NCBI GenBank assembly: GCA_002269645.1
Contig: NIVC01002249.1
Span: 1 to 64,000, forward strand
DNA: 64,000 bases
Direction: 5' to 3'
Source: Macrostomum lignano
Taxonomy: Eukaryota
Below are positions 4,570 through 56,355 of this stretch, one piece after another. The notes under the pieces were generated by a model. It made no database searches, was not told the DNA's origin, and worked only from the letters and a program-made list of their open reading frames with translations. The position numbers were made by a program, and so were the translations under genes. Within the stretch, counting starts at the first letter, position 1. Each line of letters starts with the position of its first letter.

Positions 4570-7181
4570 ATGTCAGCTGATAAGCAGCACCGGTTAGCCA
4601 GCGCTAGCTTGAACAAGCTGGTTAAACGACTGAAGAAGTACGCGGATTCCGAGTCAACTTCCGGTCTAGTGAGAGCTGTTTGAAATAATTTTATATAAGT
4701 AGCTTGACAATAATTAAGACGATATTTTTGTATTAAAACCGGTAATCATAGGCTACCATTGCTTTCTAGACATTACCTAAAAGCCGCCGTGATCTCCAAT
4801 TTGGCGTCATGATATCCAATTTGGCGCCATGATCTCCAATTTGGCGTCATGATATCCAATTTGGCGCCATGATCTCTAATTTGGCGCCTTGATATCCAAT
4901 TTGGCGCCATGATCTCCAATTTGGCGTCTTGATCTCTAATTTTGCGCAATGATCTCTAATTTGGCGCCATGATCTCCAATTTGGCGTCATGATATCCAAT
5001 TTGGCGTCTTGGTCTCTAATTTGGCGCCATGATCTCCAATTTGGCGTCATGATATCCAATTTGGCGCCATGATCTCCAATTTGGCGCCATGATCTCTAAT
5101 TTGGCGCCATGATCCCTAATTTGGCGCCATTATATCCAATTTTGCGCAATGATTTCCCATAAGAAAAAGCAATAATGAAATGTCTAACACTGAATTCTCT
5201 ATTTGACATGTCAGATTTCCAAGAAAGCAGAGCGCGGCCTCGCCCAGCTGCAGTCGCTGCCGCCCCTGTCGGCAAAGCAGCTGAGCGACTCTGGCCTGCC
5301 GGGCATTGTCAACCGCCTGCGGAAGCGGCTCCGACCGGAGGAACCTGCGGCTCGAACTGCTAGACGCCTCATCAAATCCTGGCGACTCGTCGTGGAGTTT
5401 GAGCAGAAGCAACAGCAGGAGCAGCAAGATCAAGTAAATGATTCCTCAGAACATCGAAGGCCGGCAGAAAAGCTATCAAAGAAAGATTCTGCAACAACAA
5501 CAGATCGAGGGCCGGCTGAAAAGCTATCAAAGAAAGATTCTGCAACAACAGATCGAGGGCCGGCAGAAAAGCTAGCAAAGAAAGATTCTGCAACAACAAC
5601 AGATCGAGGGCCGGCAGAAAAGCTAGCAAAGAAAGATTCTGCAACAACAGATCGAGGGCCGGCAGAAAAGCTAGCAAAGAAAGATTCTGCAACAACAGAT
5701 CGAGGGCCGGCAGAAAAGCTAGCAAAGAAAGATTCTGCAACAACAGATCGAGGGCCGGCAGAAAAGCTAGCAAAGAAAGATTCTGCAACAACAGATCGAG
5801 GGCCGGCAGAAAAGCTAGCAAAGAAAGATTCTGCAACAACAGATCGAGGGCCGGCAGAAAAGCTAGCAAAGAAAGATTCTGCAACAACAGATCGAGGGCC
5901 GGCAGAAAAGCTAGCAAAGAAAGATTCTGCAACAACAGATCGAGGGCCGGCAGAAAAGCTAGCAAAGAAAGATTCTGCAACAACAGATCGAGGGCCGGCA
6001 GAAAAGCTAGCAAAGAAAGATTCTGCAACAACAGATCGAGGGCCGCAGAAAAGCTAGCAAAGAAAGATTCTGCAACAACAGATCGAGACCGGACAAATGT
6101 GTCCGACACTAATGGCGGTGGTGCCGACGATGTCTCGTGGACACCGAGCACCACCGATCCCGCCCGGTTGAAGGCCATCGAAATGTTTGAGCAGGCGCTA
6201 CAGATGGTGAGCATGAGTGTTTTGGAGTCTCATGTTTGGAGATTCATGATGATCCCGGTTTCCGATTGTTTGAAGAAGCTTGCTTGCATTGAGAAATGGA
6301 CCTTGTATAAGACCAATCGTAGTCGCGAGTTCGAATCTCAACATCAGTTAATATTATTGCAATATAGTCTATATTTTAGTACAGATTTAGTATAGTGGGG
6401 TTGTAGCCTAGTGGTTAGAGCGTCGGACTCACGACTTGAAGGTCGGGGTTCGATTCCCGATCCCACTGGAACAATTTGTGTCCTTGAGCAAGACACTTAA
6501 CTCTGCATTGCTTCAGTTCACCCAGCTGTAAAATGGATGCCAGCATTAGCTGGGGTAATTGAGGGTGTGTGTGTGGCGACCCCCAGTCCTTGGACTGAAC
6601 AGCCGTACGCAGCCTTCAGATGCGCCGCGCAATAGCTGCGGCTGAGCTGTCGGTTGCACATCTGGCCCAATTGGGGCAGGTGTAATCAATTATTATTATT
6701 ATTTAGTACAGAACAATGCCTTGCCTTATAGACGTCATCCAGCGCTGCCGCCGCCCGGCCGCCCCGACGTCTGTCCGCGGAAATCGAGGCCGCGGTCTTC
6801 GCCGACGCCGGCTCGGACACCGGCCGCTACCGGGCCCGCCTGCGCTGCCTGATACAGAATCTGCGCGACCCCAAGAATCCCGGCTTGCGCGCCAGCCTGC
6901 TTGACGGCGCCCTGGCAGCGCCCGACTTCGCCGTGATGACCTCCGAGCAGCTGGCGTCGGCCGAGATGCGGCAGCTTCGACAGCGGCTGGCAGACGAAGC
7001 GGCCGCCAGGCTGAAGTCGGTGGCGTCGGCCAGCTCGGAGCCGGGCAGCAGCCTCTTCACCTGCAAGCGCTGCCGGAAGAAGAACTGCACTTATAACCAG
7101 CTGCAGACTCTGCCGGGGGACGAGCCCATGACCACTTATGTGCTGTGCAACGAGTGCGGCTTCCGGTGGAAGTTTAACTAA
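4570..7181 (+). CDS. Divergent TFIIS/TCEA-family elongation factor. Exons 4570-4668, 5215-6206, 6732-7181
   Basis: N-terminal TFIIS-N-like helices, a central domain (RYRARLRCLIQNLRDPKNPGLR...MTSEQLASAEM) and a C-terminal Zn ribbon (FTCKRCRKKNCTYNQLQTLPGDEPMTTYVLCNECGFRWKF). Phase-0 GT-AG junctions. Exon 2 has a 1-nt frameshift near 6046. Confidence 0.85.
4790..5155. repeat. 20-bp minisatellite (GATCTCCAATTTGGCGCCAT)n in TFIIS intron 1
   Basis: About 18 copies with a strict 20-bp period. Confidence 0.95.
5455..6085 (+). repeat. Coding tandem repeat, 48/51-nt unit = DRGPAEKLAKKDSATT(T), about 12-13 copies
   Basis: Unit lengths are multiples of 3 and the repeat is open in the TFIIS frame. Confidence 0.85.
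6386..6701 (+). mobile_element. tRNA-derived SINE with CORE/MIR-like central domain and (TTA)n tail, in TFIIS intron 2
   Basis: A box TAGCCTAGTGG and B box GGTTCGATTCC. Core GTGTCCTTGAGCAAGACACTTAAC...CAGCTGTAAAATGG. TATTATTATTAT tail. Flanking direct repeat TTTAGTACAGA at 6375-6385 and 6702-6712. Confidence 0.85.
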
Positions 7182-13104: not shown

Positions 13105-13425
13105 TCCATACATACCATACCCAGAAGTCCCACACATTCCATACCGGAAGTCCCACACATTCCATACCGGAAGTCCCACACATTCCATACCGGAAGTCCC
13201 ACACATCCCATACCGGAAGTTCCACACATCCAATACAGGAAGTCCCGCACATTCCACACCGGAAGTCCCACAATTCCATACTGGAAGTCCCACACATTCC
13301 ATACGGGAAGTCCCACACATCCAATACAGGAAGTCCGCACATTCCACACCGGAAGTCCCACACATTCCATACCGGAAGTCCCACACATACCACAGCGGAA
13401 GTTCTACACATCCCACACCGGAACT
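13105..13425. repeat. 23-bp minisatellite (CCATACCGGAAGTCCCACACATT)n between the convergent innexin and ASPDH 3' ends
   Basis: About 13 copies. Confidence 0.93.
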
Positions 13426-13456
13426 CCGCACAGCCTGTCCCTGCGGCGCCGCCAGC

Positions 13457-14296
13457 TCAGCAGGAGCGCACAGCGGGTCGCCTCCGAGCGCCGGCCGCCC
13501 TGAGCACACTGGCTAGAAAAGATCGAAAAGTGGCGCCACCAGTGACGGCGCCGGGCGCCGCCGGGTTAAACCGGCGCGTACAGACCCGAAACCCGTCGGG
13601 TCCCTCGGCTTCGACTTCGACCAGGTGCGCCTCCGGCATGCCGGGATCGGCACGCAGCCGCCCGACGACGCCGTCGAAGCCCAGGTTGGTGGCGCAGACT
13701 GCGGCGGCGGCCATGGTGTTGACGTTGTTGGGCGCCAGCGGGCAGAGGCCGCGGACCGGGCCCTCGTACAGCACAGTCGGTCCTTCGGTGGCGGCGGCGG
13801 CCTCCTCGTTGCGACGTCGCATTTCCGGATCGGCGAACCGGAAGCTGTCAGGCCGCTTGGTCATTGTGACTTGGAGCGAGCGCAGGCCGCCGGACTCGGC
13901 CAGTCGCTCGATGTCCGGGCCGCCCCAGAGGGCGCCAGCAGGGACAAACAGTGTCCGGCCGGACGTCTCGGCGGCCGAGCGGAGCTTCGCTTCCAGCTGG
14001 GCGTCGGCCAGCGCAGTCGGCGAGCCCATCAGGTAGTCGGCGACGGCCAGGAAGTCGGCGCCGTGCCGCTGGGTGACGCACGGATGGGCGACCTCGACGA
14101 TGAGGTCGGGCGACCGGCTGGCGAAGTCGGCGAGGTCGGCGAGCTCCAGGCCGGCCGGCAGGTCGCGCAAGGCGTTGGTGCGGGTTCGATTCCACACGAA
14201 GGCCAGCTCGATGGCGGGCTGGGCAACAAGCTGCTCGAACAGGTACTGGCCCAGGTGGCCGAAGCCGACAAGGCCCACTCGGCGGGGTCGGTCAGC
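13457..14296 (-). CDS. ASPDH: Aspartate dehydrogenase domain-containing protein; single coding exon lacking an in-frame ATG
   Basis: Rossmann motif VGLVGFGHLG, plus LIVEVAHP, GALWGGPDI, GLCPLAPNNVNTMAAAA and NPAAPGAVTG. The coding sequence begins at an AAG|GCT acceptor (14296). Confidence 0.9.
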   Translation of the reverse strand, partial: ADRPRRVGLVGFGHLGQYLFEQLVAQPAIELAFVWNRTRTNALRDLPAGLELADLADFASRSPDLIVEVAHPCVTQRHGADFLAVADYLMGSPTALADAQLEAKLRSAAETSGRTLFVPAGALWGGPDIERLAESGGLRSLQVTMTKRPDSFRFADPEMRRRNEEAAAATEGPTVLYEGPVRGLCPLAPNNVNTMAAAAVCATNLGFDGVVGRLRADPGMPEAHLVEVEAEGPDGFRVCTRRFNPAAPGAVTGGATFRSFLASVLRAAGARRRPAVRSC

Positions 14297-14644
14297 CTTT
14301 AAGTGTTCATAGCGATCGTTTTTTGAGGGCAACAAGAATCATCAAGACAACTGCAGGCTACTGACTACTTATTTGTAATGTACGCGAGTAGTTATGCTGC
14401 AAATTAGAGCAATTTACTACGTAATAATCGCCACTTAATCTAGATGTACTCGTATATAGCTGCTGCAGCTAAACAATATATATTACTGCAAGTAGTTGTG
14501 CATACTACTGGTACGTATGTGCACTGCGAGACAGAGCAATTTTATTCGCAATATTTAGTTTCATTCTTAATACTCGTAAACTAGGTCTTAGATTCAATAT
14601 TCTCGCTAGAGTAATAAGATTAAAAGTACGAAATTGAATGACGT

Positions 14645-17600
14645 GGAGGGCGATTCTCCAGTGGGTTGGGGGCGATTCTCCAGTTGGTTGGGGGCGATTC
14701 TCCAGTGGGTTGGAGGGCGATTCTCAAGTGGATTGGAGGGCGATTCTCAAGTGGGTTGGAGGGCGATTCTCCAGTGGATTGGAGGGCGATTCTCAAGTGG
14801 GTTGGAGGGCGATTCTCCAGTGGGTTGGAGGGCGATTCTCCAGTGGGTTGGGGGCGATTCTCAAGTGGGTTGGAGGGCGATTCTCCAGTGGATTGGAGGG
14901 CGATTCTCAGTGGATTGGAGGGCGATTCTCCAGTGGATTGGAGGGCGATTCTCCAGTGGGTTGGAGGGCGATTCTCCAGTGGGTTGGGGGCGATTCTCAA
15001 GTGGGTTGGAGGGCGATTCTCCAGTGGATTGGAGGGCGATTCTCAAGTGGATTGGAGGGCGATTCTCCAGTGGGTTGGAGGGCGATTCTCCAGTGGGTTG
15101 GGGGCGATTCTCAAGTGGGTTGGAGGGCGATTCTCCAGTGGGTTGGGGGCGATTCTCAAGTGGGTTGGAGGGCGATTCTCCAGTGGATTGGAGGGCGATT
15201 CTCAAGTGGATTGGAGGGCGATTCTCCAGTGGGTTGGAGGGCGATTCTCAAGTGGATTGGAGGGCGATTCTCAAGTGGATTGGAGGGCGATTCTCCAGTG
15301 GGTTGGAGGGCGTTGGCGATTCTTCAGTGGGTTGGAGGGCGATTCTCCAGTGGATTGGAGGGCGATTCTCAAGTGGATTGGAGGGCGATTCTCCAGTGGG
15401 TTGGAGGGCGATTCTCAAGTGGATTGGAGGGCTATTCTCCAGTGGGTTGGAGGGCGATTCTCAAGTGGATTGGAGGGCGATTCTCAAGTGGATTGGAGGG
15501 CGATTCTCCAGTGGATTGGAGGGCGATTCTCAAGTGGATTGGAGGGCGATTCTCCAGTGGGTTGGAGGGCGATTCTCAAGTGGATTGGAGGGCGATTCTC
15601 AAGTGGATTGGAGGGCGATTCTCCAGTGGGTTGGAGGGCGTGGGCGATTCTTCAGTGGGTTGGAGGGCGATTCTCCAGTGGATTGGAGGGCGATTCTCAA
15701 GTGGATTGGAGGGCGATTCTCCAGTGGGTTGGAGGGCGATTCTCCAGTGGGTTCGGGTGCGATTCTCGTGGGTTGGGGGCGATTCTCCAGTGGGTTGGAG
15801 GGCGATTCTTAAGTGGATTGGAGGGCGATTCTCAAGTGGATTGGAGGGCGTGGGCGATTCTCCAGTTGGTTGGGGGCGATTCTCCAGTGGGGTTGGGGGC
15901 AATTCTCGTGGGTTGGGGGCGGTTCTCCAATGGGTTGGAGGGCGATTCTCCAGTGGATTGGAGGGCGATTCTCCAGTGGGTTGGAGGGCGATTCTCAAGT
16001 GGATTGGAGGGCGATTCTCAAGTGGATTGGAGGGCGATTCTCCAGTGGGCTGGAGGGCGTGGGCGATTCTTCAGTGGGTTGGAGGGCGATTCTCCAGTGG
16101 ATTGGAGGGCGATTCTCAAGTGGATTGGAGGGCGATTCTCCAGTGGGTTGGAGGGCGATTCTCCAGTGGGTTCGGGTGCGATTCTCGTGGGTTGGGGGCG
16201 ATTCTCCAGTGGGTTGGAGGGCGATTCTTAAGTGGATTGGAGGGCGATTCTCAAGTGGATTGGAGGGCGTGGGCGATTCTCCAGTTGGTTGGGGGCGATT
16301 CTCCAGTGGGGTTGGGGGCAATTCTCGTGGGTTGGGGGCGGTTCTCCAATGGGTTGGAGGGCGATTCTCCAGTGGATTGGAGGGCGATTCTCCAGTGGGT
16401 TGGAGGGCGATTCTCAAGTGGATTGAAGGGCGATTCTCAAGTGGATTGGAGGGCGATTCTCAAGTGGATTGGAGGGCGATTCTCCAGTGGGTTGGAGGGC
16501 GTGGGCGATTCTTCAGTGGGTTGGAGGGCGATTCTCCAGTGGATTGGAGGGCGATTCTCCAGTGGATTGGAGGGCGATTCTCCAGTGGGTTGGAGGGCGA
16601 TTCTCCAGTGGGTTCGGGTGCGATTCTCGTGGGTTGGGGGCGATTCTCCAGTGGGTTGGAGGGCGATTCTTAAGTGGATTGGAGGGCGATTCTCAAGTGG
16701 ATTGGAGGGCGTGGGCGATTCTCCAGTTGGTTGGGGGCGATTCTCCAGTGGGGTTGGGGGCAATTCTCGTGGGTTGGGGGCGATTCTCCAATGGGTTGGA
16801 GGGCGATTCTCCAGTGGATTGGAGGGCAATTCTCCAGTGGATTGGAGGGCGATTCTCTAGTGGATTGGAGGGCGATTCTCTAGTAGGTTGGAGGGCGTGG
16901 GCCATTCTCCAGTTGGTTGGAGGGCGATTCTCCAGTGGGTTGGGGGCGATTCTCCAGTTGGTTGGGGGCGATTCTCCAGTGGGTTGGAGGGCGATTCTCA
17001 AGTGGATTGGAGGGCGATTCTCAAGTGGGTTGGAGGGCGATTCTCCAGTGGATTGGAGGGCGATTCTCAAGTGGGTTGGAGGGCGATTCTCCAGTGGGTT
17101 GGAGGGCGATTCTCCAGTGGGTTGGGGGCGATTCTCAAGTGGGTTGGAGGGCGATTCTCCAGTGGATTGGAGGGCGATTCTCAAGTGGATTGGAGGGCGA
17201 TTCTCCAGTGGATTGGAGGGCGATTCTCCAGTGGGTTGGAGGGCGATTCTCCAGTGGGTTGGGGGCGATTCTCAAGTGGGTTGGAGGGCGATTCTCCAGT
17301 GGATTGGAGGGCGATTCTCAAGTGGATTGGAGGGCGATTCTCCAGTGGGTTGGAGGGCGATTCTCCAGTGGGTTGGGGGCGATTCTCAAGTGGGTTGGAG
17401 GGCGATTCTCCAGTGGGTTGGGGGCGATTCTCAAGTGGGTTGGAGGGCGATTCTCCAGTGGATTGGAGGGCGATTCTCAAGTGGATTGGAGGGCGATTCT
17501 CCAGTGGGTTGGAGGGCGATTCTCAAGTGGATTGGAGGGCGATTCTCAAGTGGATTGGAGGGCGATTCTCCAGTGGGTTGGAGGGCGTGGGCGATTCTTC

Positions 17601-20600
17601 AGTGGGTTGGAGGGCGATTCTCCAGTGGATTGGAGGGCGATTCTCAAGTGGATTGGAGGGCGATTCTCCAGTGGGTTGGAGGGCGATTCTCAAGTGGATT
17701 GGAGGGCTATTCTCCAGTGGGTTGGAGGGCGATTCTCAAGTGGATTGGAGGGCGATTCTCAAGTGGATTGGAGGGCGATTCTCCAGTGGATTGGAGGGCG
17801 ATTCTCAAGTGGATTGGAGGGCGATTCTCCAGTGGGTTGGAGGGCGATTCTCAAGTGGATTGGAGGGCGATTCTCAAGTGGATTGGAGGGCGATTCTCCA
17901 GTGGGTTGGAGGGCGTGGGCGATTCTTCAGTGGGTTGGAGGGCGATTCTCCAGTGGATTGGAGGGCGATTCTCAAGTGGATTGGAGGGCGATTCTCCAGT
18001 GGGTTGGAGGGCGATTCTCCAGTGGGTTCGGGTGCGATTCTCGTGGGTTGGGGGCGATTCTCCAGTGGGTTGGAGGGCGATTCTTAAGTGGATTGGAGGG
18101 CGATTCTCAAGTGGATTGGAGGGCGTGGGCGATTCTCCAGTTGGTTGGGGGCGATTCTCCAGTGGGGTTGGGGGCAATTCTCGTGGGTTGGGGGCGGTTC
18201 TCCAATGGGTTGGAGGGCGATTCTCCAGTGGATTGGAGGGCGATTCTCCAGTGGGTTGGAGGGCGAATCTCAAGTGGATTGGAGGGCGATTCTCAAGTGG
18301 ATTGGAGGGCGATTCTCCAGTGGGTTGGAGGGCGTGGGCGATTCTTCAGTGGGTTGGAGGGCGATTCTCCAGTGGATTGGAGGGCGATTCTCAAGTGGAT
18401 TGGAGGGCGATTCTCCAGTGGGTTGGAGGGCGATTCTCCAGTGGGTTCGGGTGCGATTCTCGTGGGTTGGGGGCGATTCTCCAGTGGGTTGGAGGGCGAT
18501 TCTTAAGTGGATTGGAGGGCGATTCTCAAGTGGATTGGAGGGCGTGGGCGATTCTCCAGTTGGTTGGGGGCGATTCTCCAGTGGGGTTGGGGGCAATTCT
18601 CGTGGGTTGGGGGCGGTTCTCCAATGGGTTGGAGGGCGATTCTCCAGTGGATTGGAGGGCGATTCTCCAGTGGGTTGGAGGGCGATTCTCAAGTGGATTG
18701 AAGGGCGATTCTCAAGTGGATTGGAGGGCGATTCTCAAGTGGATTGGAGGGCGATTCTCCAGTGGGTTGGAGGGCGTGGGCGATTCTTCAGTGGGTTGGA
18801 GGGCGATTCTCCAGTGGATTGGAGGGCGATTCTCCAGTGGATTGGAGGGCGATTCTCCAGTGGGTTGGAGGGCGATTCTCCAGTGGGTTCGGGTGCGATT
18901 CTCGTGGGTTGGGGGCGATTCTCCAGTGGGTTGGAGGGCGATTCTTAAGTGGATTGGAGGGCGATTCTCAAGTGGATTGGAGGGCGTGGGCGATTCTCCA
19001 GTTGGTTGGGGGCGATTCTCCAGTGGGGTTGGGGGCAATTCTCGTGGGTTGGGGGCGATTCTCCAATGGGTTGGAGGGCGATTCTCCAGTGGATTGGAGG
19101 GCAATTCTCCAGTGGATTGGAGGGCGATTCTCTAGTGGATTGGAGGGCGATTCTCTAGTAGGTTGGAGGGCGTGGGCCATTCTCCAGTTGGTTGGAGGGC
19201 GATTCTCCAGTGGATTGGAGGGCGATTCTCCAGTTGATTGGAGGGCGATTCTCTAGTGGATTGGAGGGCGATTCTCTAGTAGGTTGGAGGGCGTGGGCCA
19301 TTCTCCAGTGGGCTGGAGGGCGATTCTCCAGTTGGTTGGGGGCGATTCTCCAGTTGGTTGGGGGCGATTCTCCAGTGGGTTGGAGGGCGATTCTCCAGTT
19401 GGTTGGAGGGCGATTCTCCAGTGGGTTGGAGGGCGATTCTCCAGTGGGTTGGAGGGCGTGGGCGATTCTTCAGTGGGTTGGAGGGCGATTCTCCAGTGGA
19501 TTGGAGGGCGATTCTCAAGTGGATTGGAGGGCGATTCTCCAGTGGGTTGGAGGGCGATTCTCCAGTGGGTTCGGGTGCGATTCTCGTGGGTTGGGGGCGA
19601 TTCTCCAGTGGGTTGGAGGGCGATTCTTAAGTGGATTGGAGGGCGATTCTCAAGTGGATTGGAGGGCGTGGGCGATTCTCCAGTTGGTTGGGGGCGATTC
19701 TCCAGTGGGGTTGGGGGCAATTCTCGTGGGTTGGGGGCGATTCTCCAATGGGTTGGAGGGCGATTCTCCAATGGGTTGGAGGGCGATTCTCCAGTGGATT
19801 GGAGGGCGATTCTCCAGTGGATTGGAGGGCGATTCTCCAGTGGGTTGGAGGGCGATTCTCCAGTGGGTTCGGGTGCGATTCTCGTGGGTTGGGGGCGATT
19901 CTCCAGTGGGTTGGAGGGCGATTCTTAAGTGGATTGGAGGGCGATTCTCAAGTGGATTGGAGGGCGTGGGCGATTCTCCAGTTGGTTGGGGGCGATTCTC
20001 CAGTGGGGTTGGGGGCAATTCTCGTGGGTTGGGGGCGATTCTCCAATGGGTTGGAGGGCGATTCTCCAGTGGATTGGAGGGCAATTCTCCAGTGGATTGG
20101 AGGGCGATTCTCTAGTGGATTGGAGGGCGATTCTCTAGTAGGTTGGAGGGCGTGGGCCATTCTCCAGTTGGTTGGAGGGCGATTCTCCAGTGGATTGGAG
20201 GGCGATTCTCCAGTTGATTGGAGGGCGATTCTCTAGTGGATTGGAGGGCGATTCTCTAGTAGGTTGGAGGGCGTGGGCCATTCTCCAGTGGGCTGGAGGG
20301 CGATTCTCCAGTTGGTTGGGGGCGATTCTCCAGTTGGTTGGGGGCGATTCTCCAGTGGGTTGGAGGGCGATTCTCCAGTTGGTTGGAGGGCGATTCTCCA
20401 GTGGGTTGGAGGGCGATTCTCCAGTGGGTTGGAGGGCGTGGGCGATTCTTCAGTGGGTTGGAGGGCGATTCTCCAGTGGATTGGAGGGCGATTCTCAAGT
20501 GGATTGGAGGGCGATTCTCCAGTGGGTTGGAGGGCGATTCTCCAGTGGGTTCGGGTGCGATTCTCGTGGGTTGGGGGCGATTCTCCAGTGGGTTGGAGGG

Positions 20601-21556
20601 CGATTCTTAAGTGGATTGGAGGGCGATTCTCAAGTGGATTGGAGGGCGTGGGCGATTCTCCAGTTGGTTGGGGGCGATTCTCCAGTGGGGTTGGGGGCAA
20701 TTCTCGTGGGTTGGGGGCGGTTCTCCAATGGGTTGGAGGGCGATTCTCCAGTGGATTGGAGGGCGATTCTCCAGTGGGTTGGAGGGCGATTCTCAAGTGG
20801 ATTGGAGGGCGATTCTCAAGTGGATTGGAGGGCGATTCTCCAGTGGGTTGGAAGGCGTGGGCGATTCTTCAGTGGGTTGGAGGGCGATTCTCCAGTGGAT
20901 TGGAGGGCGATTCTCAAGTGGATTGGAGGGCGATTCTCCAGTGGGTTGGAGGGCGATTCTCCAGTGGGTTCGGGTGCGATTCTCGTGGGTTGGGGGCGAT
21001 TCTCCAGTGGGTTGGAGGGCGATTCTTAAGTGGATTGGAGGGCGATTCTCAAGTGGATTGGAGGGCGTGGGCGATTCTCCAGTTGGTTGGGGGCGATTCT
21101 CCAGTGGGGTTGGGGGCAATTCTCGTGGGTTGGGGGCGTTTCTCCAATGGGTTGGAGGGCGATTCTCCAGTGGATTGGAGGGCGATTCTCCAGTGGATTG
21201 GAGGGCGATTCTCTAGTGGATTGGAGGGCGATTCTCCAGTGGATTGGAGGGCGATTCTCTAGTGGATTGGAGGGCGATTCTCTAGTAGGTTGGAGGGCGT
21301 GGGCCATTCTCCAGTTGGTTGGAGGGCGATTCTCCAGTGGATTGGAGGGCGATTCTCCAGTTGATTGGAGGGCGATTCTCTAGTGGATTGGAGGGCGATT
21401 CTCTAGTAGGTTGGAGGGCGTGGGCCATTCTCCAGTGGGCTGGAGGGCGATTCTCCAGTTGGTTGGGGGCGATTCTCCAGTTGGTTGGGGGCGATTCTCC
21501 AGTGGGTTGGAGGGCGATTCTCCAGTTGGTTGGAGGGCGATTCTCCAGTGGGTTGG
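14645..21556. repeat. 6.9-kb satellite, 22-23 bp monomer (GGAGGGCGATTCTCCAGTGGGTT) with higher-order repeats
   Basis: About 300 monomers. Variant positions recur at 419/442, 980 and 2275 bp offsets. Confidence 0.98.
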
Positions 21557-22134
21557 ATGGTGATGAGTTTTTGCATTGATTTGGACTGCAACAAATGCAA
21601 TGACTAAAAGGTAATTTTTAGTGAGTCTACAATGAGCAATGAGCAAGTCTCCAGGCACTCAGTTAGCAGAAGGAAGCGGTTTGCCGATAGTCAAAATCAC
21701 GTGACTAGGACAAGGCGTCCTTTTCATCGCACAGGTAATACGCGCGCACAAAAACAATATATTAGGTCATACATTTTAATAGCAGTATAATTAGTGAATT
21801 TTAACGTCCATGCGTACCTTCAATTTGGTACGAATTGAGACTGAGTCTGTCTATTAACGCGTACGTTACTTAATGCTTGAAGTACATCTATGCGATATAG
21901 CAACATTAAACTTGACGGCAACGCAAAAACATACAAAATTATGAGATTACAATAAAATCTAAGCGGGCAGGAATGAGGTTGGGGCTTTGGAATTTCAGCG
22001 AAATATAACAATGCTGTTATAAACTTTTAGCGTTTTAGAACTTTTAGTACAGCACTACAGTACCCTATGGATGTACCGGTATAAGTAAAATAGCTTTTAT
22101 GTAAAACTACAATAACTTCAAATCAAAACAATCA

Positions 22135-22537: not shown

Positions 22538-24826
22538 TCAATAACCAATGAGATCTTTGATGGCGGCCAGGCAGCGGCGCTGATGGGGCAGGTAGAAATT
22601 CTCGAATATATGTGGAAACGGCGTGTCATGACCGGCTACTCGCCTCACTGGCGCCTCCAGATTGAGGAAGCAGTGCTCCTGCACCGAGGCGGCCAGCTCG
22701 GCGCCGAAACCGCCGGTCAGCGGCGCCTCGTGCGCGATCAGACAGCGGCCGGTTTTGCACACAGACGCGTACACGGTCTCCTCGTCGAATGGCAGGATGG
22801 TGCGCATGTCGATTAGTTCGCAGGAGACGCCGAGCTCGGATTGGGCTAGGCGGGCCACCTCCCGGAGCACATGCACCTGTGCGACAGGTGGGAGGATAAA
22901 ATAGGCCATAGAAACTGCGCGACGATATTGACTATACTTGACTATATTTTACTAGCAGAAGTCTTAGCAACCGCTTAGCAACAGCATAGTAACTGCATAG
23001 AAACCACAAAGCAACTGCATAGCAACTGAATAGCAACCAAATATCAACAACATAGCAACCAAATGGCAACAGCATAACAACCACATAGCAACTGCATAGC
23101 AACCACATAGCAACGACATAGCAACCAAATAGCAACAGCATAGCAACCACTTAGCAACTGAATAGTAACCATATAGCAACGACATAGCAACGGTGTAACA
23201 ACCACATAGACGTAACTTAGGAACAGCATAGCAACCGGACTAGAAGAGTAAACTAGAAAAATGATTATTTTAACACCAACCTGAGTCCCGTAGCCAATGA
23301 GGGTAACGTCGCTGCCTTCAATTAGCACTTCGGCTTTGCCAATGGGCAGCACGTAGCCATTGACTGGCACGTCTTCAACGGCCGATCTGTACAAAATTTT
23401 CGGCTCAAAATAAAAACACGGATCTGGATCGTTGATGCAGGCCAGCAGGAGGCCCTTAGCCTGGATTGGGCCGCGCGGTATCACCACCTTGATGCCGGGC
23501 AGGTGGGCGAAGAAGCCCTCGGGACTCTGGCTGTGGTACAGGGCGCCGTGACCAACAGCGCCTATTGGGGCCCGGACAGTGAGGGAGCCGCAGTTGAAAT
23601 GATTCCCAGACCGGTACCGATACTTGGAGGCCTCGTTCGCAATCTGATCGAATGCCGGGAAGATGTAGTCTCCGAACTGGATCTCCGCCACCGTGGTGGC
23701 CCCGGCGACTGCGTGACCGATGGCGAATCCAACGATGCCCTGCGGAATTCGCCGGGTAAGGATGAGCAGCGGAGTAGGACTTGAGCAAGGAGTAGGGATA
23801 TTTACTGATGGGATAGGGAAGGCTGCTGCAAGGGTAGGAAAGGCAGTTGCTATGGTAGGCAAGACTGTTGCTAGGGTAGGGAAGGCTGTTGCTAGGGTGG
23901 GGGTCTGTTGCTAGGATGGAAGAGGCTGTTGCTAGGGTTGGAAAGGCAGTTGCTAGGATGGAAGAGGCTGTTGCTAGGGTTGGAAAGGCAGTTGCTATGG
24001 TAGGCAAGACTATTGCTAGGGTTGGGGAAGTCTGTTGCTAGGATTGGGAAGGCTGTTGCTAGGGTGGAGAAGTCTGTTGCTAGGGTGGAGAAGGCTGTTG
24101 CTAGGGTGGAGAAGGCTGTTGCTAGGGTGGAGAAGGCTGTTGCTAGGGTGGAGAAGGCTGTTGCTAGGATGGAAGAGGCTGTTGCTAGGGTTGGAAAGGC
24201 AGTTGCTAGGGTTGGAAAGGCAGTTGCTAGGATGGAAGAGGCTGTTGCTAGGGTTGGAAAGGCAGTTGCTAGGATGGAAGAGGCTGTTGCTAGGGTTGGA
24301 AAGGCAGTTGCTATGGTAGGCAAGACTATTGCTAGGGTTGGGGAAGTCTGTTGCTAGGATTGGGAAGGCTGTTGCTAGGGTGGAGAAGGCTGTTGCTAGG
24401 GTGGAAAAGGCTGTTGCTAGGGTGGAAAAGGCTGTTGCTATGATGGTTATTGAAGTCTAGAGGAAAACCACACGAACAGCTCACCTGTTCACTAAGTGGG
24501 GTATTAAACACCCTGTCCTTGCCATATTTGTCCTTTAAGCCAACTGTGCAGCGAAACACGCCGCCAAAGGCGACATCCTCGCCAAACACCACAGCGGACG
24601 GATCGTTAGCCAGCGTGTTGTCCAGAGCCGAGGTGACGGCCTGGAACAGGTTCATCCGGCTGGTCTCGCCCAAGGATTTGTCAGCGGATTCGGGGGTGTA
24701 CACGAACTGAGGGCCGAAGGACAGGCGGCGACGGCTGAAGCTGGCGGCATCGAGGCAGACAGGGCCGAGTCTGGCGGCCAGCGACCGGCAGCTGCCGCCG
24801 AGCAGCAAAGACGCGATGGGCAGCAT
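22538..24826 (-). CDS. BCKDHB: Branched-chain alpha-keto acid dehydrogenase E1 beta. Exons 24826-24485, 23739-23281, 22876-22538
   Basis: [36 protein letters not shown]|[36 protein letters not shown] and [13 protein letters not shown]-terminus resembles a mitochondrial presequence. GT-AG, phase 0. Confidence 0.97.
22965..23235. repeat. CATAGCAAC-based repeat in BCKDHB intron 2
   Basis: About 20 copies of (A/C)ATAGCAAC with short spacers. Confidence 0.9.
23790..24440. repeat. 21-bp minisatellite (GAAGGCTGTTGCTAGGGTGGA)n in BCKDHB intron 1
   Basis: About 30 copies. Confidence 0.95.
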
Positions 24827-24994
24827 CAAGGTGGGGGGGGGGGGTCACACCAGGTAGTTGCACGCCATGTGTCTGAGCAGCTTTGGATATAATAATCATC
24901 TCTTATGACTCCTCACAGCTATTGTTGCCCATATCATATCCATTTTTTTACTGAAACCTGTCATTGACGGCCGCTCTAAAACCAAGGTTACTAT

Positions 24995-35040: not shown

Positions 35041-36584
35041 TTTGAGTAGTTCTGCTTTTTAACTGTATGTTAGAACTGTAGATATTTCAGCCAGCTATTG
35101 CTGGACAAGACATCTAAGCATGCAATAAATTCAATGTTTTCATTTTTTAAAAAAGAGAAGTGATAGCAGCCACAACATTGAAACCAAAGTTAACTAAGTA
35201 TTCATACATGTGCAACCCAAACCCGAAAATAGACAAAAAACTAACTAGCTGACGAGCCATTTAGCCTTAATAATAAAGTTATAGTTACTCCTGCCGCTTA
35301 CCCAAAATTACATTAATTATGCTTGGGTTTCTTTTACAGGTAAGTTGCACAGCCAGTGTAAATCAGGGGGGGGGTGCGCATGTATGTTTAAGACTATGGT
35401 GAGCCTACTGGGATTTTAAATAAAGCATTTTTGACTATGACCTACAGATGGGTTTACCTGATGTCAATGACCTTGTTTCCCAAGATTTATACTAACAATA
35501 GTTGTTTTTGCCTTTAAAACTCATTCAACTTCTCTTAGTTAATAAATAAAAAGGCTTTTTTCAGATTGTTGTAGGGTTTGTGCTAAAAAATGACAAACAA
35601 AAAATCAAAACTAAATAATATAATAAAACAATTTGAGATAATAAGCTATAGCACTACTGCAGCTCTGTTTGAAGTTTTTTTTATTTGAATCCATGCCAGT
35701 GAGCATAAACAATTATGCTATTGTGACATAGAAGTGTCTTTGAATTGTCTATGATCCAAAAGGGATATGTATGATAAAGCTAAATAGGAAAGATACAAAG
35801 AGCATTATGAGCCAAAAATGGCTAGATATCTAGTAAGGCCAACTAGGATAATACTAAAAAACAAAATACTATCACATGATGTAATTCTTTAATTGCACAT
35901 AAATGCTTATAAACAGGACAACAATGCTTATAGAGGCTGCTATTTTCAATGGTTGACAAAGTATACCCTAATTGCCAATAAAAAAGTTTATGGCTACCTT
36001 GTTAGTACAAGTGGTATAATGTACTAATAAGTCTGCAATACCAAGAAAAGCAATGCTACTTAAATGGATATTCTTAGGATTGCAAGACTTTTTAGGCATA
36101 GGTCAAGGTGTATAGTTTTCTTTTAAACATAGCTATCTAGAACTTTAGCAGCTTATTAGTGAACAAATCTATATTTTGTGCTGCTTGTCTAAATATCTGT
36201 CTATCTATTGTTGATTTTTTGAGAACAGTCTGGCCATTTTTTAATTAGCTTTAAATACATTCTACTTTTAGGGAATCATGCATAACTTTTTTGATGAAAA
36301 ATTTGAATGGGAAGTGGGTCAAATATTCGAAAAAAGATTTTTATATGCTTTTAATAGGTACTCTGTTTTTTAATTTAATTATTCAGTTTAACCATTTAGC
36401 CTAGGCTTCTCTTTGGCTTTTATACAATATTTATTTATATTTATTTATACTAATTATTAGTAGGCCTAAGTTAAATATTTGAAGAAAAAAAAGTTTTTAA
36501 TGCTTGCAATGTTTGAACTTTTAATTTGAATGTTTACCATTGGGGGCTTAGTGTCATAGTATGCTTAATATATACTCAGCCAGC

Positions 36585-49102: not shown

Positions 49103-55841
<6,739 letters not shown>

Positions 55842-56355
55842 AGCAAATTTGAGTCCGTTGACAGTTCGCACTGAAAAATATGCTGATTGGCCGAATCTCG
55901 ACTACAAAGACAATCTCTTGCTGCACTCTCCTCTCTCTTCTTTCTTGCTCTTAGATGCTGCAGAAAAAGCAGTAACTGATATTGTGTTGACAGCACAGAC
56001 ACACGGCGGCCGCGCAACAACTTGAAATCAAGTTGATTTATGATTCAAAATTTAGAGCCTGAAAATGCAGTACCGTTTCGTATAAGTACTCGTCTAGAAT
56101 TGCTTTATTATGTTTCCGCAAAAAATATTAACACTAGCTCTTGTCGCTACTTGCTAAGTTGAATTGAATTGAATATTTCGATTCTTTCTCAACTTGATTA
56201 ATTGCAAAGTTATGAGAGTGTTTTAGTTTGCCATGTTGGCATAATATGTTTTTCCCCTATCCAAAAATGTAGTTTGACTATGAAAAATTATTAAATAAAC
56301 TTAGGAAACGAAAATAAAAAAGAAACGAAAATACTACTTGTTCAAGTAAGTAGAG

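What the first reader, a model, noticed from the sequence alone, without database searches (positions are those of the whole stretch)
14270..14345. ASPDH has no genomic start codon: candidate for a Met donated by the spliced-leader 3' AUG
Seen in sequence (- strand): an in-frame TGA lies ~45 nt upstream of the conserved region. No in-frame ATG follows it, and the only AG in between is TTAAAG|GCT GAC CGA CCC CGC CGA GTG GGC. I found no ATG|GT mini-exon in the 8 kb up to BCKDHB by eye. Adding one Met at the junction gives MADRPRRVGLVGFG, which parallels the vertebrate ASPDH start (MADRGPWRVGVVGYG, from memory). Established knowledge: platyhelminth spliced leaders end in AUG that can initiate translation (shown in Schistosoma). 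Inference: this gene obligatorily depends on trans-splicing for its start codon.
Basis: partly seen in the sequence, partly recalled or inferred. Interest (0 to 1): 0.72.

Follow-up and report, generated by a model that had tools for sequence, protein, structure and literature searches.

The report
ASPDH gene lacking its own start codon
This flatworm (Macrostomum lignano) copy of the aspartate dehydrogenase gene really has no start codon in the DNA and most likely borrows one from the trans-spliced leader RNA, a mechanism already known in flatworms, so this is an ordinary new example that also exposes a probable polishing error in the reference genome.

Summary
The window is Macrostomum lignano, Mlig_3_7 contig NIVC01002249.1:1-64000. 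The intronless ASPDH ORF (13457-14296, minus strand) has in-frame TGA TGA 45 nt upstream, no in-frame ATG, and an AG (14298-14297) in phase 0.

The species' 35-nt spliced leader (SL) ends in ...TTGCATG. Two other copies of the locus in the same assembly read TGCATG|GCTGAC where the window reads TTAAAG|GCTGAC. These are three differences within four bases, all towards SL bases.

Mlig_3_7 was polished with Pilon using RNA-seq. The simplest reading is that SL-bearing reads overwrote the acceptor. If so, SL-ATG|GCTGAC mRNAs exist.

The neighbouring BCKDHB shows the reverse pattern: TTGATG| in the window against TTGCAG| in the other copies. An importin-like gene carries an exact 13-nt SL suffix in its 5' leader.

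The ORF is under purifying selection (9 synonymous, 1 non-synonymous difference). No transcript could be retrieved, so trans-splicing at this weak AAG site in this copy is inferred, not shown.

SL-donated start codons are established in flatworms (Cheng 2006). Verdict: a new member of a known kind, of modest interest.

The parts
13457..14296 (-). Intronless ASPDH ORF (279 codons plus stop), beginning GCT GAC CGA... (ADRPRRVGLVGFG...) with no ATG of its own
   Evidence: Pfam PF03447 and PF01958. 99% identity to M. lignano PAA52195.1/PAA94054.1 and 50-58% to animal ASPDH.
14297..14302 (-). TTAAAG: proposed SL trans-splice acceptor, with the AG at 14298-14297 in phase 0 with the ORF. It matches 5 of 6 positions of the published motif [T/C]TNCAG; the mismatch is A instead of C at -3.
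   Evidence: Sequence; motif from PMC8629364. The sister copies read TGCATG here.
14339..14344 (-). In-frame TGA TGA that closes the reading frame 45 nt upstream of GCT
14299..14310 (-). Out-of-frame upstream ATG AAC ACT TAA. It is a harmless 3-codon ORF in this copy. In the sister copies as assembled (ATGAACACTGCATGG...) it opens an out-of-frame ORF of more than 80 codons that overlaps the apparent start.
   Evidence: (ORF 14029..14271).
14351..14356 (-). CTGCAG: a consensus-type alternative acceptor upstream. SL-AUG joined here would read AUG UUG UCU UGA, a dead-end 3-codon ORF.
   Evidence: motif.
14644..21564 (.). 6.9-kb satellite (23-nt unit, about 297 copies, 419-nt higher-order period) that fills most of the BCKDHB-ASPDH spacer. 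It is only about 0.65 kb in the sister copies.
21701..21727 (-). The only candidate cis-spliced ATG exon upstream (ATGAAAAGGACGCCTTGTCCTAGTCAC|GTGATT). It has a weak donor, is conserved in all three copies, and is absent from the deposited gene models.
24824..24826 (-). BCKDHB 'start codon' in this copy (ccTTGATG|CTGCCC). The sister copies read ccTTGCAG|CTGCCC, a consensus trans-splice acceptor in phase 0, and have 5'-partial CDS.
35119..35131 (-). Exact 13-nt 3' end of the SL (AATTTATTGCATG; 17 of the last 20 SL bases match), 78 nt upstream of the importin-like gene's ATG (35040-35038)
   Evidence: the best SL-like site in the window; about 0.002-0.005 expected by chance.

Best explanation
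The ASPDH gene of Macrostomum lignano is an intronless gene whose mRNA is made by SL trans-splicing at the AG directly in front of GCT GAC CGA. The 35-nt spliced leader (...TTGCATG) supplies the only in-frame AUG, giving MADRPRRVGLVGFG....

The genomic ATG seen at this position in the two sister copies of the same assembly (TGCATG|GCT) is most likely not real DNA. It is probably a footprint of SL-bearing RNA-seq reads used with Pilon to polish Mlig_3_7. The same process would explain the ATG in front of BCKDHB in this window and the 13-nt SL suffix in the importin leader.

Shown:
- The window copy has no genomic ATG.
- The SL ends in ATG.
- SL-specific bases sit at the junction in the sister copies.
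- RNA-seq was used in polishing.
- The ORF is under purifying selection.

Inferred:
- The SL-like bases come from reads rather than from DNA.
- The window copy itself is expressed and spliced at its AAG.
- Ribosomes start at the SL AUG.
For: (1) There is no in-frame ATG between the TGA TGA and the Rossmann motif. The only internal Met (codon 91) would remove the NAD-binding domain.

(2) The M. lignano SL is CGGTCTCTTACTGCGAAGACTCAATTTATTGCATG. All reported flatworm SLs end in AUG, and S. mansoni has more than 40 cDNAs that need it. Wiberg 2023 flags the final ATG as a start codon in Macrostomum.

(3) Sister copies L001 and L002 read TGCATG|GCTGAC against the window's TTAAAG|GCTGAC. These are three differences in four bases, all to SL bases. 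Apart from one cluster inside a 23-nt tandem repeat, this is the only cluster of three or more differences in 11.8 kb of alignment at 98.4% identity. My estimate of chance for that site and direction is about 1e-6.

[quoted passage not shown] The same paper's transcript-assembly mapping used --alignEndsType EndToEnd.

(5) The reciprocal case is BCKDHB: the window has TTGATG|CTG and the sister copies have TTGCAG|CTG. Copy g2 has an in-frame TAA six codons upstream and no ATG. SL-AUG would give [21 protein letters not shown], which looks like a mitochondrial presequence.

(6) An exact 13-nt SL suffix lies in the importin 5' leader.

(7) The deposited ASPDH and BCKDHB models in the sister copies are 5'-partial. 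They begin 7-34 nt downstream of the junction and have no upstream exon.

(8) Window versus sister CDS shows 9 synonymous differences, 1 non-synonymous difference and one codon indel.

(9) If the sister-copy ATG were real, an upstream ATG 11 nt before it would open a long overlapping out-of-frame ORF.
Against: - No SL-junction read, cDNA or protein starting MADRPRR was found in any accessible collection.
- The acceptor is AAG rather than the preferred CAG and has no pyrimidine tract.
- The window copy has no gene call in the deposited annotation, and it escaped the presumed RNA-driven 'correction'. Both facts suggest that few SL reads map to it, so it may be weakly expressed.
- As assembled, the sister copies do carry a genomic ATG.
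- The polishing-artefact mechanism is inferred from the methods text and was not demonstrated on reads. The tract lengths (3, 6 and 13 nt) need copy-specific RNA/DNA coverage ratios to be explained.
Confidence: 0.7

Rival explanations
1. The genomic ATG in the sister copies is real. Under this reading, the window copy is a redundant homeologue of a neopolyploid genome that lost its start codon (ATG to AAG plus two nearby changes) and is silent or decaying.
For: The sister copies as assembled read ATG. The window copy has no gene call in the NCBI annotation. M. lignano carries several copies of most loci.
Against: - The two extra changed bases (-4 and -5) match the SL and have no role in a start codon.
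- The same SL-directed pattern occurs in the opposite direction at BCKDHB, and as a 13-mer at the importin gene.
- The sister gene models do not include the ATG.
- An upstream ATG 11 nt before it would open an overlapping out-of-frame ORF.
- 9 synonymous against 1 non-synonymous difference argues against early pseudogenisation.
Confidence: 0.12
2. The SL-like bases are real DNA: relics written into the genome by recombination with reverse-transcribed, SL-capped mRNA. Homeologues would then toggle between an SL-donated and a genome-encoded start codon.
For: There are three SL-suffix tracts (3, 6 and 13 nt) at the 5' ends of three consecutive same-strand genes, and they differ between copies. 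ASPDH is intronless here. A published note reports SL sequence mapping to the 5' end of a coding gene (Mlig013257.g1).
Against: - A documented technical route exists (RNA-seq in Pilon).
- All tracts are perfect, copy-specific and undecayed.
- cDNA conversion lacks homology on the SL side, so it should rarely copy SL bases.
- Three independent recent events in 20 kb would imply a genome full of relics, which has not been reported.
Confidence: 0.1
3. A cis-spliced upstream exon supplies the ATG. One version uses ATGAAAAGGACGCCTTGTCCTAGTCAC|GTGATT at 21727-21701. Another uses a 37-nt mini-intron from ATG ATT CTT|GTTGCC.
For: The candidate exon is conserved in all three copies. Mini first coding exons do exist in this genome, for example ICA69 ATGGC|GTGAGT.
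Against: - The donors are weak compared with the GT[G/A]AG consensus.
- No such exon is in the transcript-based gene models.
- The bases imprinted at the junction in the sister copies match the SL (TGCATG), not the candidate exon end (AGTCAC).
- The resulting N-terminal extension has no counterpart in orthologues.
Confidence: 0.04
4. Translation starts at a non-AUG codon (the in-frame TTG TTG at 14335-14330) on an mRNA whose 5' end lies further upstream.
For: In-frame TTG codons exist downstream of the stop.
Against: - UUG initiation is inefficient in eukaryotes (general knowledge).
- The 14-residue extension has no counterpart in orthologues and differs between copies (P to S).
- An upstream ATG (14310-14308) intervenes.
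- The gene models do not extend there.
Confidence: 0.03

Closest known systems
Flatworm SL 3'-terminal AUG used as initiator methionine (Cheng, Cohen, Ndegwa and Davis 2006, J Biol Chem 281:733; Schistosoma mansoni)
   Same: The SL ends in AUG. An acceptor AG lies in phase with an ORF that has no AUG of its own. The conserved N-terminus is completed by a single Met from the leader.
   Different: The species differs (a free-living macrostomorph). The junction was not observed in RNA here, and the acceptor is AAG. In S. mansoni the usage was shown on cDNAs and by reporter translation.
slORFs: ORFs created by SL trans-splicing (slORFfinder, PMC9851317)
   Same: Same concept: the start codon is supplied by the leader, and such ORFs are missed or called 5'-partial by genome-based annotation.
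   Different: slORFfinder needs SL-containing reads and ribosome footprints, and neither was available here. M. lignano was not among the species analysed.
Relic spliced leaders in dinoflagellate genes (mRNA recycling; recalled from memory, Slamovits and Keeling 2008)
   Same: SL-derived bases sit in genomic sequence immediately 5' of coding regions.
   Different: In dinoflagellates the relics are seen in genomic clones and are often tandem and decayed. Here the tracts are perfect and copy-specific, and they occur in an assembly polished with RNA-seq, so an artefact is more likely.
Animal aspartate dehydrogenase domain-containing protein (ASPDH; Pfam PF03447 + PF01958)
   Same: Full-length collinear match, 50-58% identity to vertebrate, echinoderm, mollusc and crustacean ASPDH, and the same N-terminal R-[VI]-G-x-V-G-[FY]-G motif.
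   Different: It is intronless and has no genome-encoded Met in this copy.

Membership tests
SL-AUG-initiated mRNA (flatworm slORF) | The species' spliced leader ends in AUG | tested here: met
   The M. lignano SL is ...ATTTATTGCATG (PMC8629364). All reported flatworm SLs end in ATG (PMC12582326).
SL-AUG-initiated mRNA (flatworm slORF) | No genome-encoded in-frame AUG between the upstream stop and the conserved N-terminus | tested here: met
   TGA TGA lies 45 nt upstream, no ATG follows, and the next Met is codon 91.
SL-AUG-initiated mRNA (flatworm slORF) | An acceptor AG in phase 0 so that SL-AUG reads into the ORF | tested here: met
   AG at 14298-14297, followed by GCT at 14296. It is a non-consensus AAG.
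SL-AUG-initiated mRNA (flatworm slORF) | SL is actually joined at that AG in mature mRNA | tested here: inconclusive
   No transcripts could be retrieved. Indirect support comes from the SL bases TGCATG at this junction in two sister copies of an RNA-seq-polished assembly and from their 5'-partial gene models.
SL-AUG-initiated mRNA (flatworm slORF) | Ribosomes initiate at the SL AUG | not testable with these tools
   This needs Ribo-seq, N-terminal proteomics or a reporter assay.
ASPDH (aspartate dehydrogenase domain-containing protein) | NAD_binding_3 (PF03447) followed by Asp_DH_C (PF01958), collinear with animal ASPDH | tested here: met
   PF03447 at residues 11-119 (57.5 bits) and PF01958 at 171-255 (67.4 bits). 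1023 homologues with E <= 1e-10.
Downstream gene of an SL-resolved operon (BCKDHB-ASPDH) | Same strand, both genes trans-spliced, and a repeat-adjusted intergenic distance under 1 kb (criterion of PMC8629364) | tested here: inconclusive
   Same strand. The spacer is 8.2 kb here (6.9 kb of it satellite) and 2.0 kb in the sister copies. After subtracting repeats the distance is about 1-1.3 kb, which is borderline. Poly(A) and SL sites are not known.

The most novel reading that the evidence does not exclude
The SL-like bases are real genomic DNA. In that case M. lignano repeatedly writes the 3' end of its spliced leader into gene 5' ends by recombination with reverse-transcribed mRNA. Recently duplicated homeologues would then flip between a leader-donated start codon (AG acceptor) and a genome-encoded one (ATG), as seen reciprocally at ASPDH and BCKDHB.
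Probability: 0.1. Interest if true: 0.75.

Novelty: new member of a known kind. Interest (0 to 1): 0.38.

Why it matters
Biologically, this adds a conserved metabolic enzyme (ASPDH), and probably BCKDHB as well, to the set of flatworm genes that can only be translated after trans-splicing. It extends a mechanism shown in Schistosoma to a basal free-living flatworm used as a regeneration and transgenesis model.

Practically, it matters for anyone using Mlig_3_7. Genes of this type are deposited as 5'-partial or are not called at all. The assembly also seems to contain leader-derived bases at trans-splice junctions, which create spurious genomic ATGs and destroy real acceptor sites differently in different copies. 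This would affect start-codon annotation, promoter and 5' UTR design for transgenes, acceptor-motif statistics, and comparisons between subgenomes.

Tried and rejected
- **Transcript or protein evidence for MADRPRR...** The full-length protein search returned only the two NCBI partial proteins. A search with the N-terminal 94 residues found no M. lignano entry and did not even recover those two, so the word index is unreliable for short queries. An exact look-up of M plus the window ORF found nothing on record.
- **Homeologue sequence for the importin 5' end.** A search with the first exon found nothing. A neighbouring single-exon ORF was not on record. The 13-mer could therefore not be compared between copies.
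- **Gene-specific literature.** 'Mlig017120' occurs in no held paper or supplement.
- **Similarity of ICA69 exon 1 to the SL.** It looked suggestive by eye, but 175 of 3552 windows score as high or higher, so I rejected it as chance.
- **Other AG/TG toggles between copies.** In about 45 kb of alignment there were only single SNPs or repeat-register differences.
- **SL RNA gene in the window.** No 15-mer of the SL is present.
- **Wasik 2015.** The paper could not be opened.

Full report
**Identity of the window.** The ORF at 13457-14296 (minus strand) is 99% identical to two Macrostomum lignano proteins. Both are annotated 'hypothetical protein BOX15_Mlig017120g1/g2, partial' (PAA94054.1 and PAA52195.1). 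It is 50-58% identical to animal ASPDH and carries PF03447 and PF01958. Exact look-ups of two single-exon proteins place the window at GCA_002269645.1 (Mlig_3_7), contig NIVC01002249.1, bases 1-64000. Two further copies of the locus sit on NIVC01000017.1 (g1; loci L002, L003, L007) and NIVC01003285.1 (g2; L001, L004). M. lignano line DV1 is a hidden polyploid, so several copies per locus are expected.

**Checking the observation.** On the minus strand the frame reads TGA TGA TTC TTG TTG CCC TCA AAA AAC GAT CGC TAT GAA CAC TTA AAG | GCT GAC CGA CCC CGC CGA GTG GGC.
- The nearest in-frame stop (14341-14339) is 45 nt upstream of GCT (14296).
- No in-frame ATG follows until codon 91, which lies beyond the Rossmann motif.
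- The AG at 14298-14297 is in phase 0.
- With a Met added, MADRPRRVGLVGFG has the length and character of orthologue N-termini: MATQRRIGIVGFG, MSRRRIGVVGFG, MSSKRKVGIVGFG and MSGSLRKRRVGIVGYG.

A second, out-of-phase AG lies inside the RRVG codons. In-frame TTG TTG codons exist. One weak ATG...|GT candidate exon lies upstream of the satellite. A phase-0 AG alone is expected by chance (about 6% per codon boundary), so it carries little weight on its own.

**What is known.** The single M. lignano SL is CGGTCTCTTACTGCGAAGACTCAATTTATTGCATG. About 30% of genes are trans-spliced, and the top acceptor motif is [T/C]TNCAG (PMC8629364). All reported flatworm SLs end in ATG (PMC12582326). In S. mansoni the SL AUG is in frame in 28% of trans-spliced mRNAs, and more than 40 cDNAs need it (Cheng 2006, as summarised in PMC9851317). 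Only this instance is new.

**The key comparison.** Both sister copies read gaacacTGCATG|GCTGACCGA where the window reads gaacacTTAAAG|GCTGACCGA.
- Over about 480 aligned bases the copies differ at eight isolated positions (about 1.7%), plus this cluster of three differences within four bases.
- All three clustered differences change the window base into the SL base at that position (-2 T, -4 C, -5 G).
- At -7, where the SL differs from the shared base, both the window and the sister copies keep the genomic base.
- In the 11.8-kb unique alignment (98.4% identity) the only other cluster of three or more differences lies inside a 23-nt tandem repeat.
- For this exact site and direction I estimate chance at about 1e-6.

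**A documented technical route.** The Mlig_3_7 methods state that the Canu assembly 'was polished with Pilon v. [quoted passage not shown] The same paper's transcript-assembly mapping used --alignEndsType EndToEnd (PMC5730564). Reads that begin inside the SL and are forced to align end to end would place SL bases over the last bases of the outron. Pilon would then write them into the consensus wherever RNA evidence outweighs DNA evidence. This step is my inference. The settings used for polishing are not given, and I could not inspect reads.

**Two further footprints in the same window.**
- BCKDHB, the next gene upstream on the same strand, shows the reciprocal pattern. The window has ccaccTTGATG|CTGCCC (ATG at 24826-24824). 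Both sister copies have ccaccTTGCAG|CTGCCC, a perfect [T/C]TNCAG acceptor in phase 0, within otherwise near-identical flanks. In g2 an in-frame TAA lies six codons upstream and there is no ATG. SL-AUG would give [22 protein letters not shown]..., which looks like a mitochondrial presequence. The two changed bases are again the SL bases.
- The best SL-like site in the window lies 78 nt upstream of the importin-like gene's ATG (35040). It is an exact 13-nt SL suffix, AATTTATTGCATG (35131-35119), with 17 of the last 20 SL bases matching. About 0.002-0.005 such matches are expected by chance. I could not obtain the homeologous sequence for this site.
- Tract lengths of 3, 6 and 13 nt fit a model in which support for SL bases falls with distance from the junction. 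The cap would be near 13 nt, set by STAR's default limit of 10 mismatches. That default is recalled from memory.

**Support from the annotation.** The deposited ASPDH CDS in g1 and g2 are 5'-partial. They start at +7 (RPRRVG...) and +22 (GLVGFG...) from the junction, although an ATG sits at -3 in those contigs. The BCKDHB CDS are also 5'-partial, starting at +25 and +34. These models come from RNA-seq. They contain no upstream exon and no contiguous 5' UTR. That is what a genome-templated mRNA beginning at the junction would give.

If the sister-copy ATG were real and preceded by a normal leader, the ATG 11 nt upstream (ATGAACACTGCATGG...) would open an out-of-frame ORF of more than 80 codons across the start. 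In the window the same ATG is closed at once by the TAA of TTAAAG.

**Is the window copy a live gene?** Its CDS differs from g1 and g2 (identical to each other) by 9 synonymous changes, 1 non-synonymous change (G183S, where the window keeps the widely conserved G) and one codon indel. Under neutrality about a quarter to a third of changes would be synonymous, so the frame has been under purifying selection.

There are two points against. The deposited annotation has no gene call on the window's ASPDH (L005 gene list). This copy also escaped the presumed RNA-driven correction. Both suggest that few reads are assigned to it. The 6.9-kb satellite between BCKDHB and ASPDH (0.65 kb in the sister copies) might lower its expression, but that is speculation.

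**Rival explanations.**
- Real ATG in the sister copies, with start-codon loss in the window. This does not explain the SL-specific bases at -4 and -5, the reciprocal BCKDHB case, the importin 13-mer or the 5'-partial models.
- Real SL relics from cDNA-mediated conversion. The sequence alone does not exclude this, and it is the most novel reading. A documented technical cause exists, however, and the tracts are perfect and copy-specific.
- A cis-spliced ATG exon. The only conserved candidate (21727-21701, donor GTGATT) is weak and is absent from the gene models. The imprinted bases match the SL, not that exon's end. ICA69 does have a true mini first coding exon, ATGGC|GTGAGT (55841-55837), so the architecture exists in this genome.
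- Initiation at TTG. This is unsupported.

**Limits.** No read, cDNA or peptide with the junction could be retrieved, and no paper mentions the gene. Trans-splicing at this AAG in this copy, and initiation at the SL AUG, therefore remain inferences. The polishing-artefact reading rests on the methods text plus three sequence footprints.

**Verdict.** The more useful by-product is evidence that Mlig_3_7 carries leader-derived bases at trans-splice junctions. These mask or mimic start codons differently in different copies.

Noticed in passing
window 24821-24830 (minus); L001 about 5570-5576; L002 about 5840-5846: BCKDHB shows the reverse of the ASPDH pattern. The window copy has a genomic ATG (TTGATG|CTG), while both sister copies have a consensus trans-splice acceptor (TTGCAG|CTG), no usable ATG and 5'-partial CDS. 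BCKDHB is therefore probably a second gene that takes its Met from the SL.
   Followed up: yes
window 35119-35131 (minus): An exact 13-nt 3' end of the spliced leader (AATTTATTGCATG; 17 of the last 20 SL bases match) lies 78 nt upstream of the importin-like gene's ATG (35040). It is probably the gene's trans-splice junction overwritten with SL bases. The homeologous sequence could not be fetched for comparison.
   Followed up: partly
window 14644-21564: A 6.9-kb satellite (23-nt unit TGGAGGGCGATTCTCCAGTGGGT, about 297 copies, 419-nt higher-order period, strong GC skew) lies between BCKDHB and ASPDH. The same array is only about 0.65 kb in the two sister copies.
   Followed up: partly
window 13457-14296 (= L005 5160-5999): The deposited Mlig_3_7 annotation has no gene call on this ASPDH copy, although the ORF is intact. 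The two sister copies are called only as 5'-partial proteins.
   Followed up: partly
window 55835-55870 (minus): ICA69 has a mini first coding exon (ATGGC|GTGAGT, ATG at 55841-55839), preceded by a TTTTTCAG acceptor 29 nt upstream. Spliced to CGGCTACCC..., it gives MAGYPGSNY...[21 protein letters not shown], which aligns with human ICA69. Its apparent similarity to the SL is not significant.
   Followed up: yes
window 24831-24842 (minus); L001 and L002 equivalents: A poly-C tract just upstream of the BCKDHB junction differs in length between copies (C12 in the window; C8 and C9 followed by A in the other two). This changes the upstream reading frame and gives g1 a spurious in-frame ATG 24 codons upstream. 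It is likely a homopolymer length error or polymorphism.
   Followed up: partly
window 21696-21705 (minus): A palindromic E-box / CLEAR-like motif (GTCACGTGAT) lies in the unique sequence between the BCKDHB 3' end and the satellite. It is conserved in all three copies and overlaps the weak candidate donor. It may be a promoter element for ASPDH.
   Followed up: no
window 13106-13432: A second 23-nt tandem array (CCACACATTCCATACCGGAAGTC, about 14 copies) starts immediately 3' of the ASPDH stop codon, between ASPDH and the convergent innexin gene.
   Followed up: no
window 5203-6214; L003, L004, L005 TFIIS models: The TFIIS/Med26-domain gene contains an expanded coding repeat (KKDSATTDRGPAEKLA, multiple copies). 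It is modelled very differently in the three copies: 500 aa in one, 244 aa in another, and 244 + 191 aa in the third. One model starts inside the repeat without an ATG.
   Followed up: no
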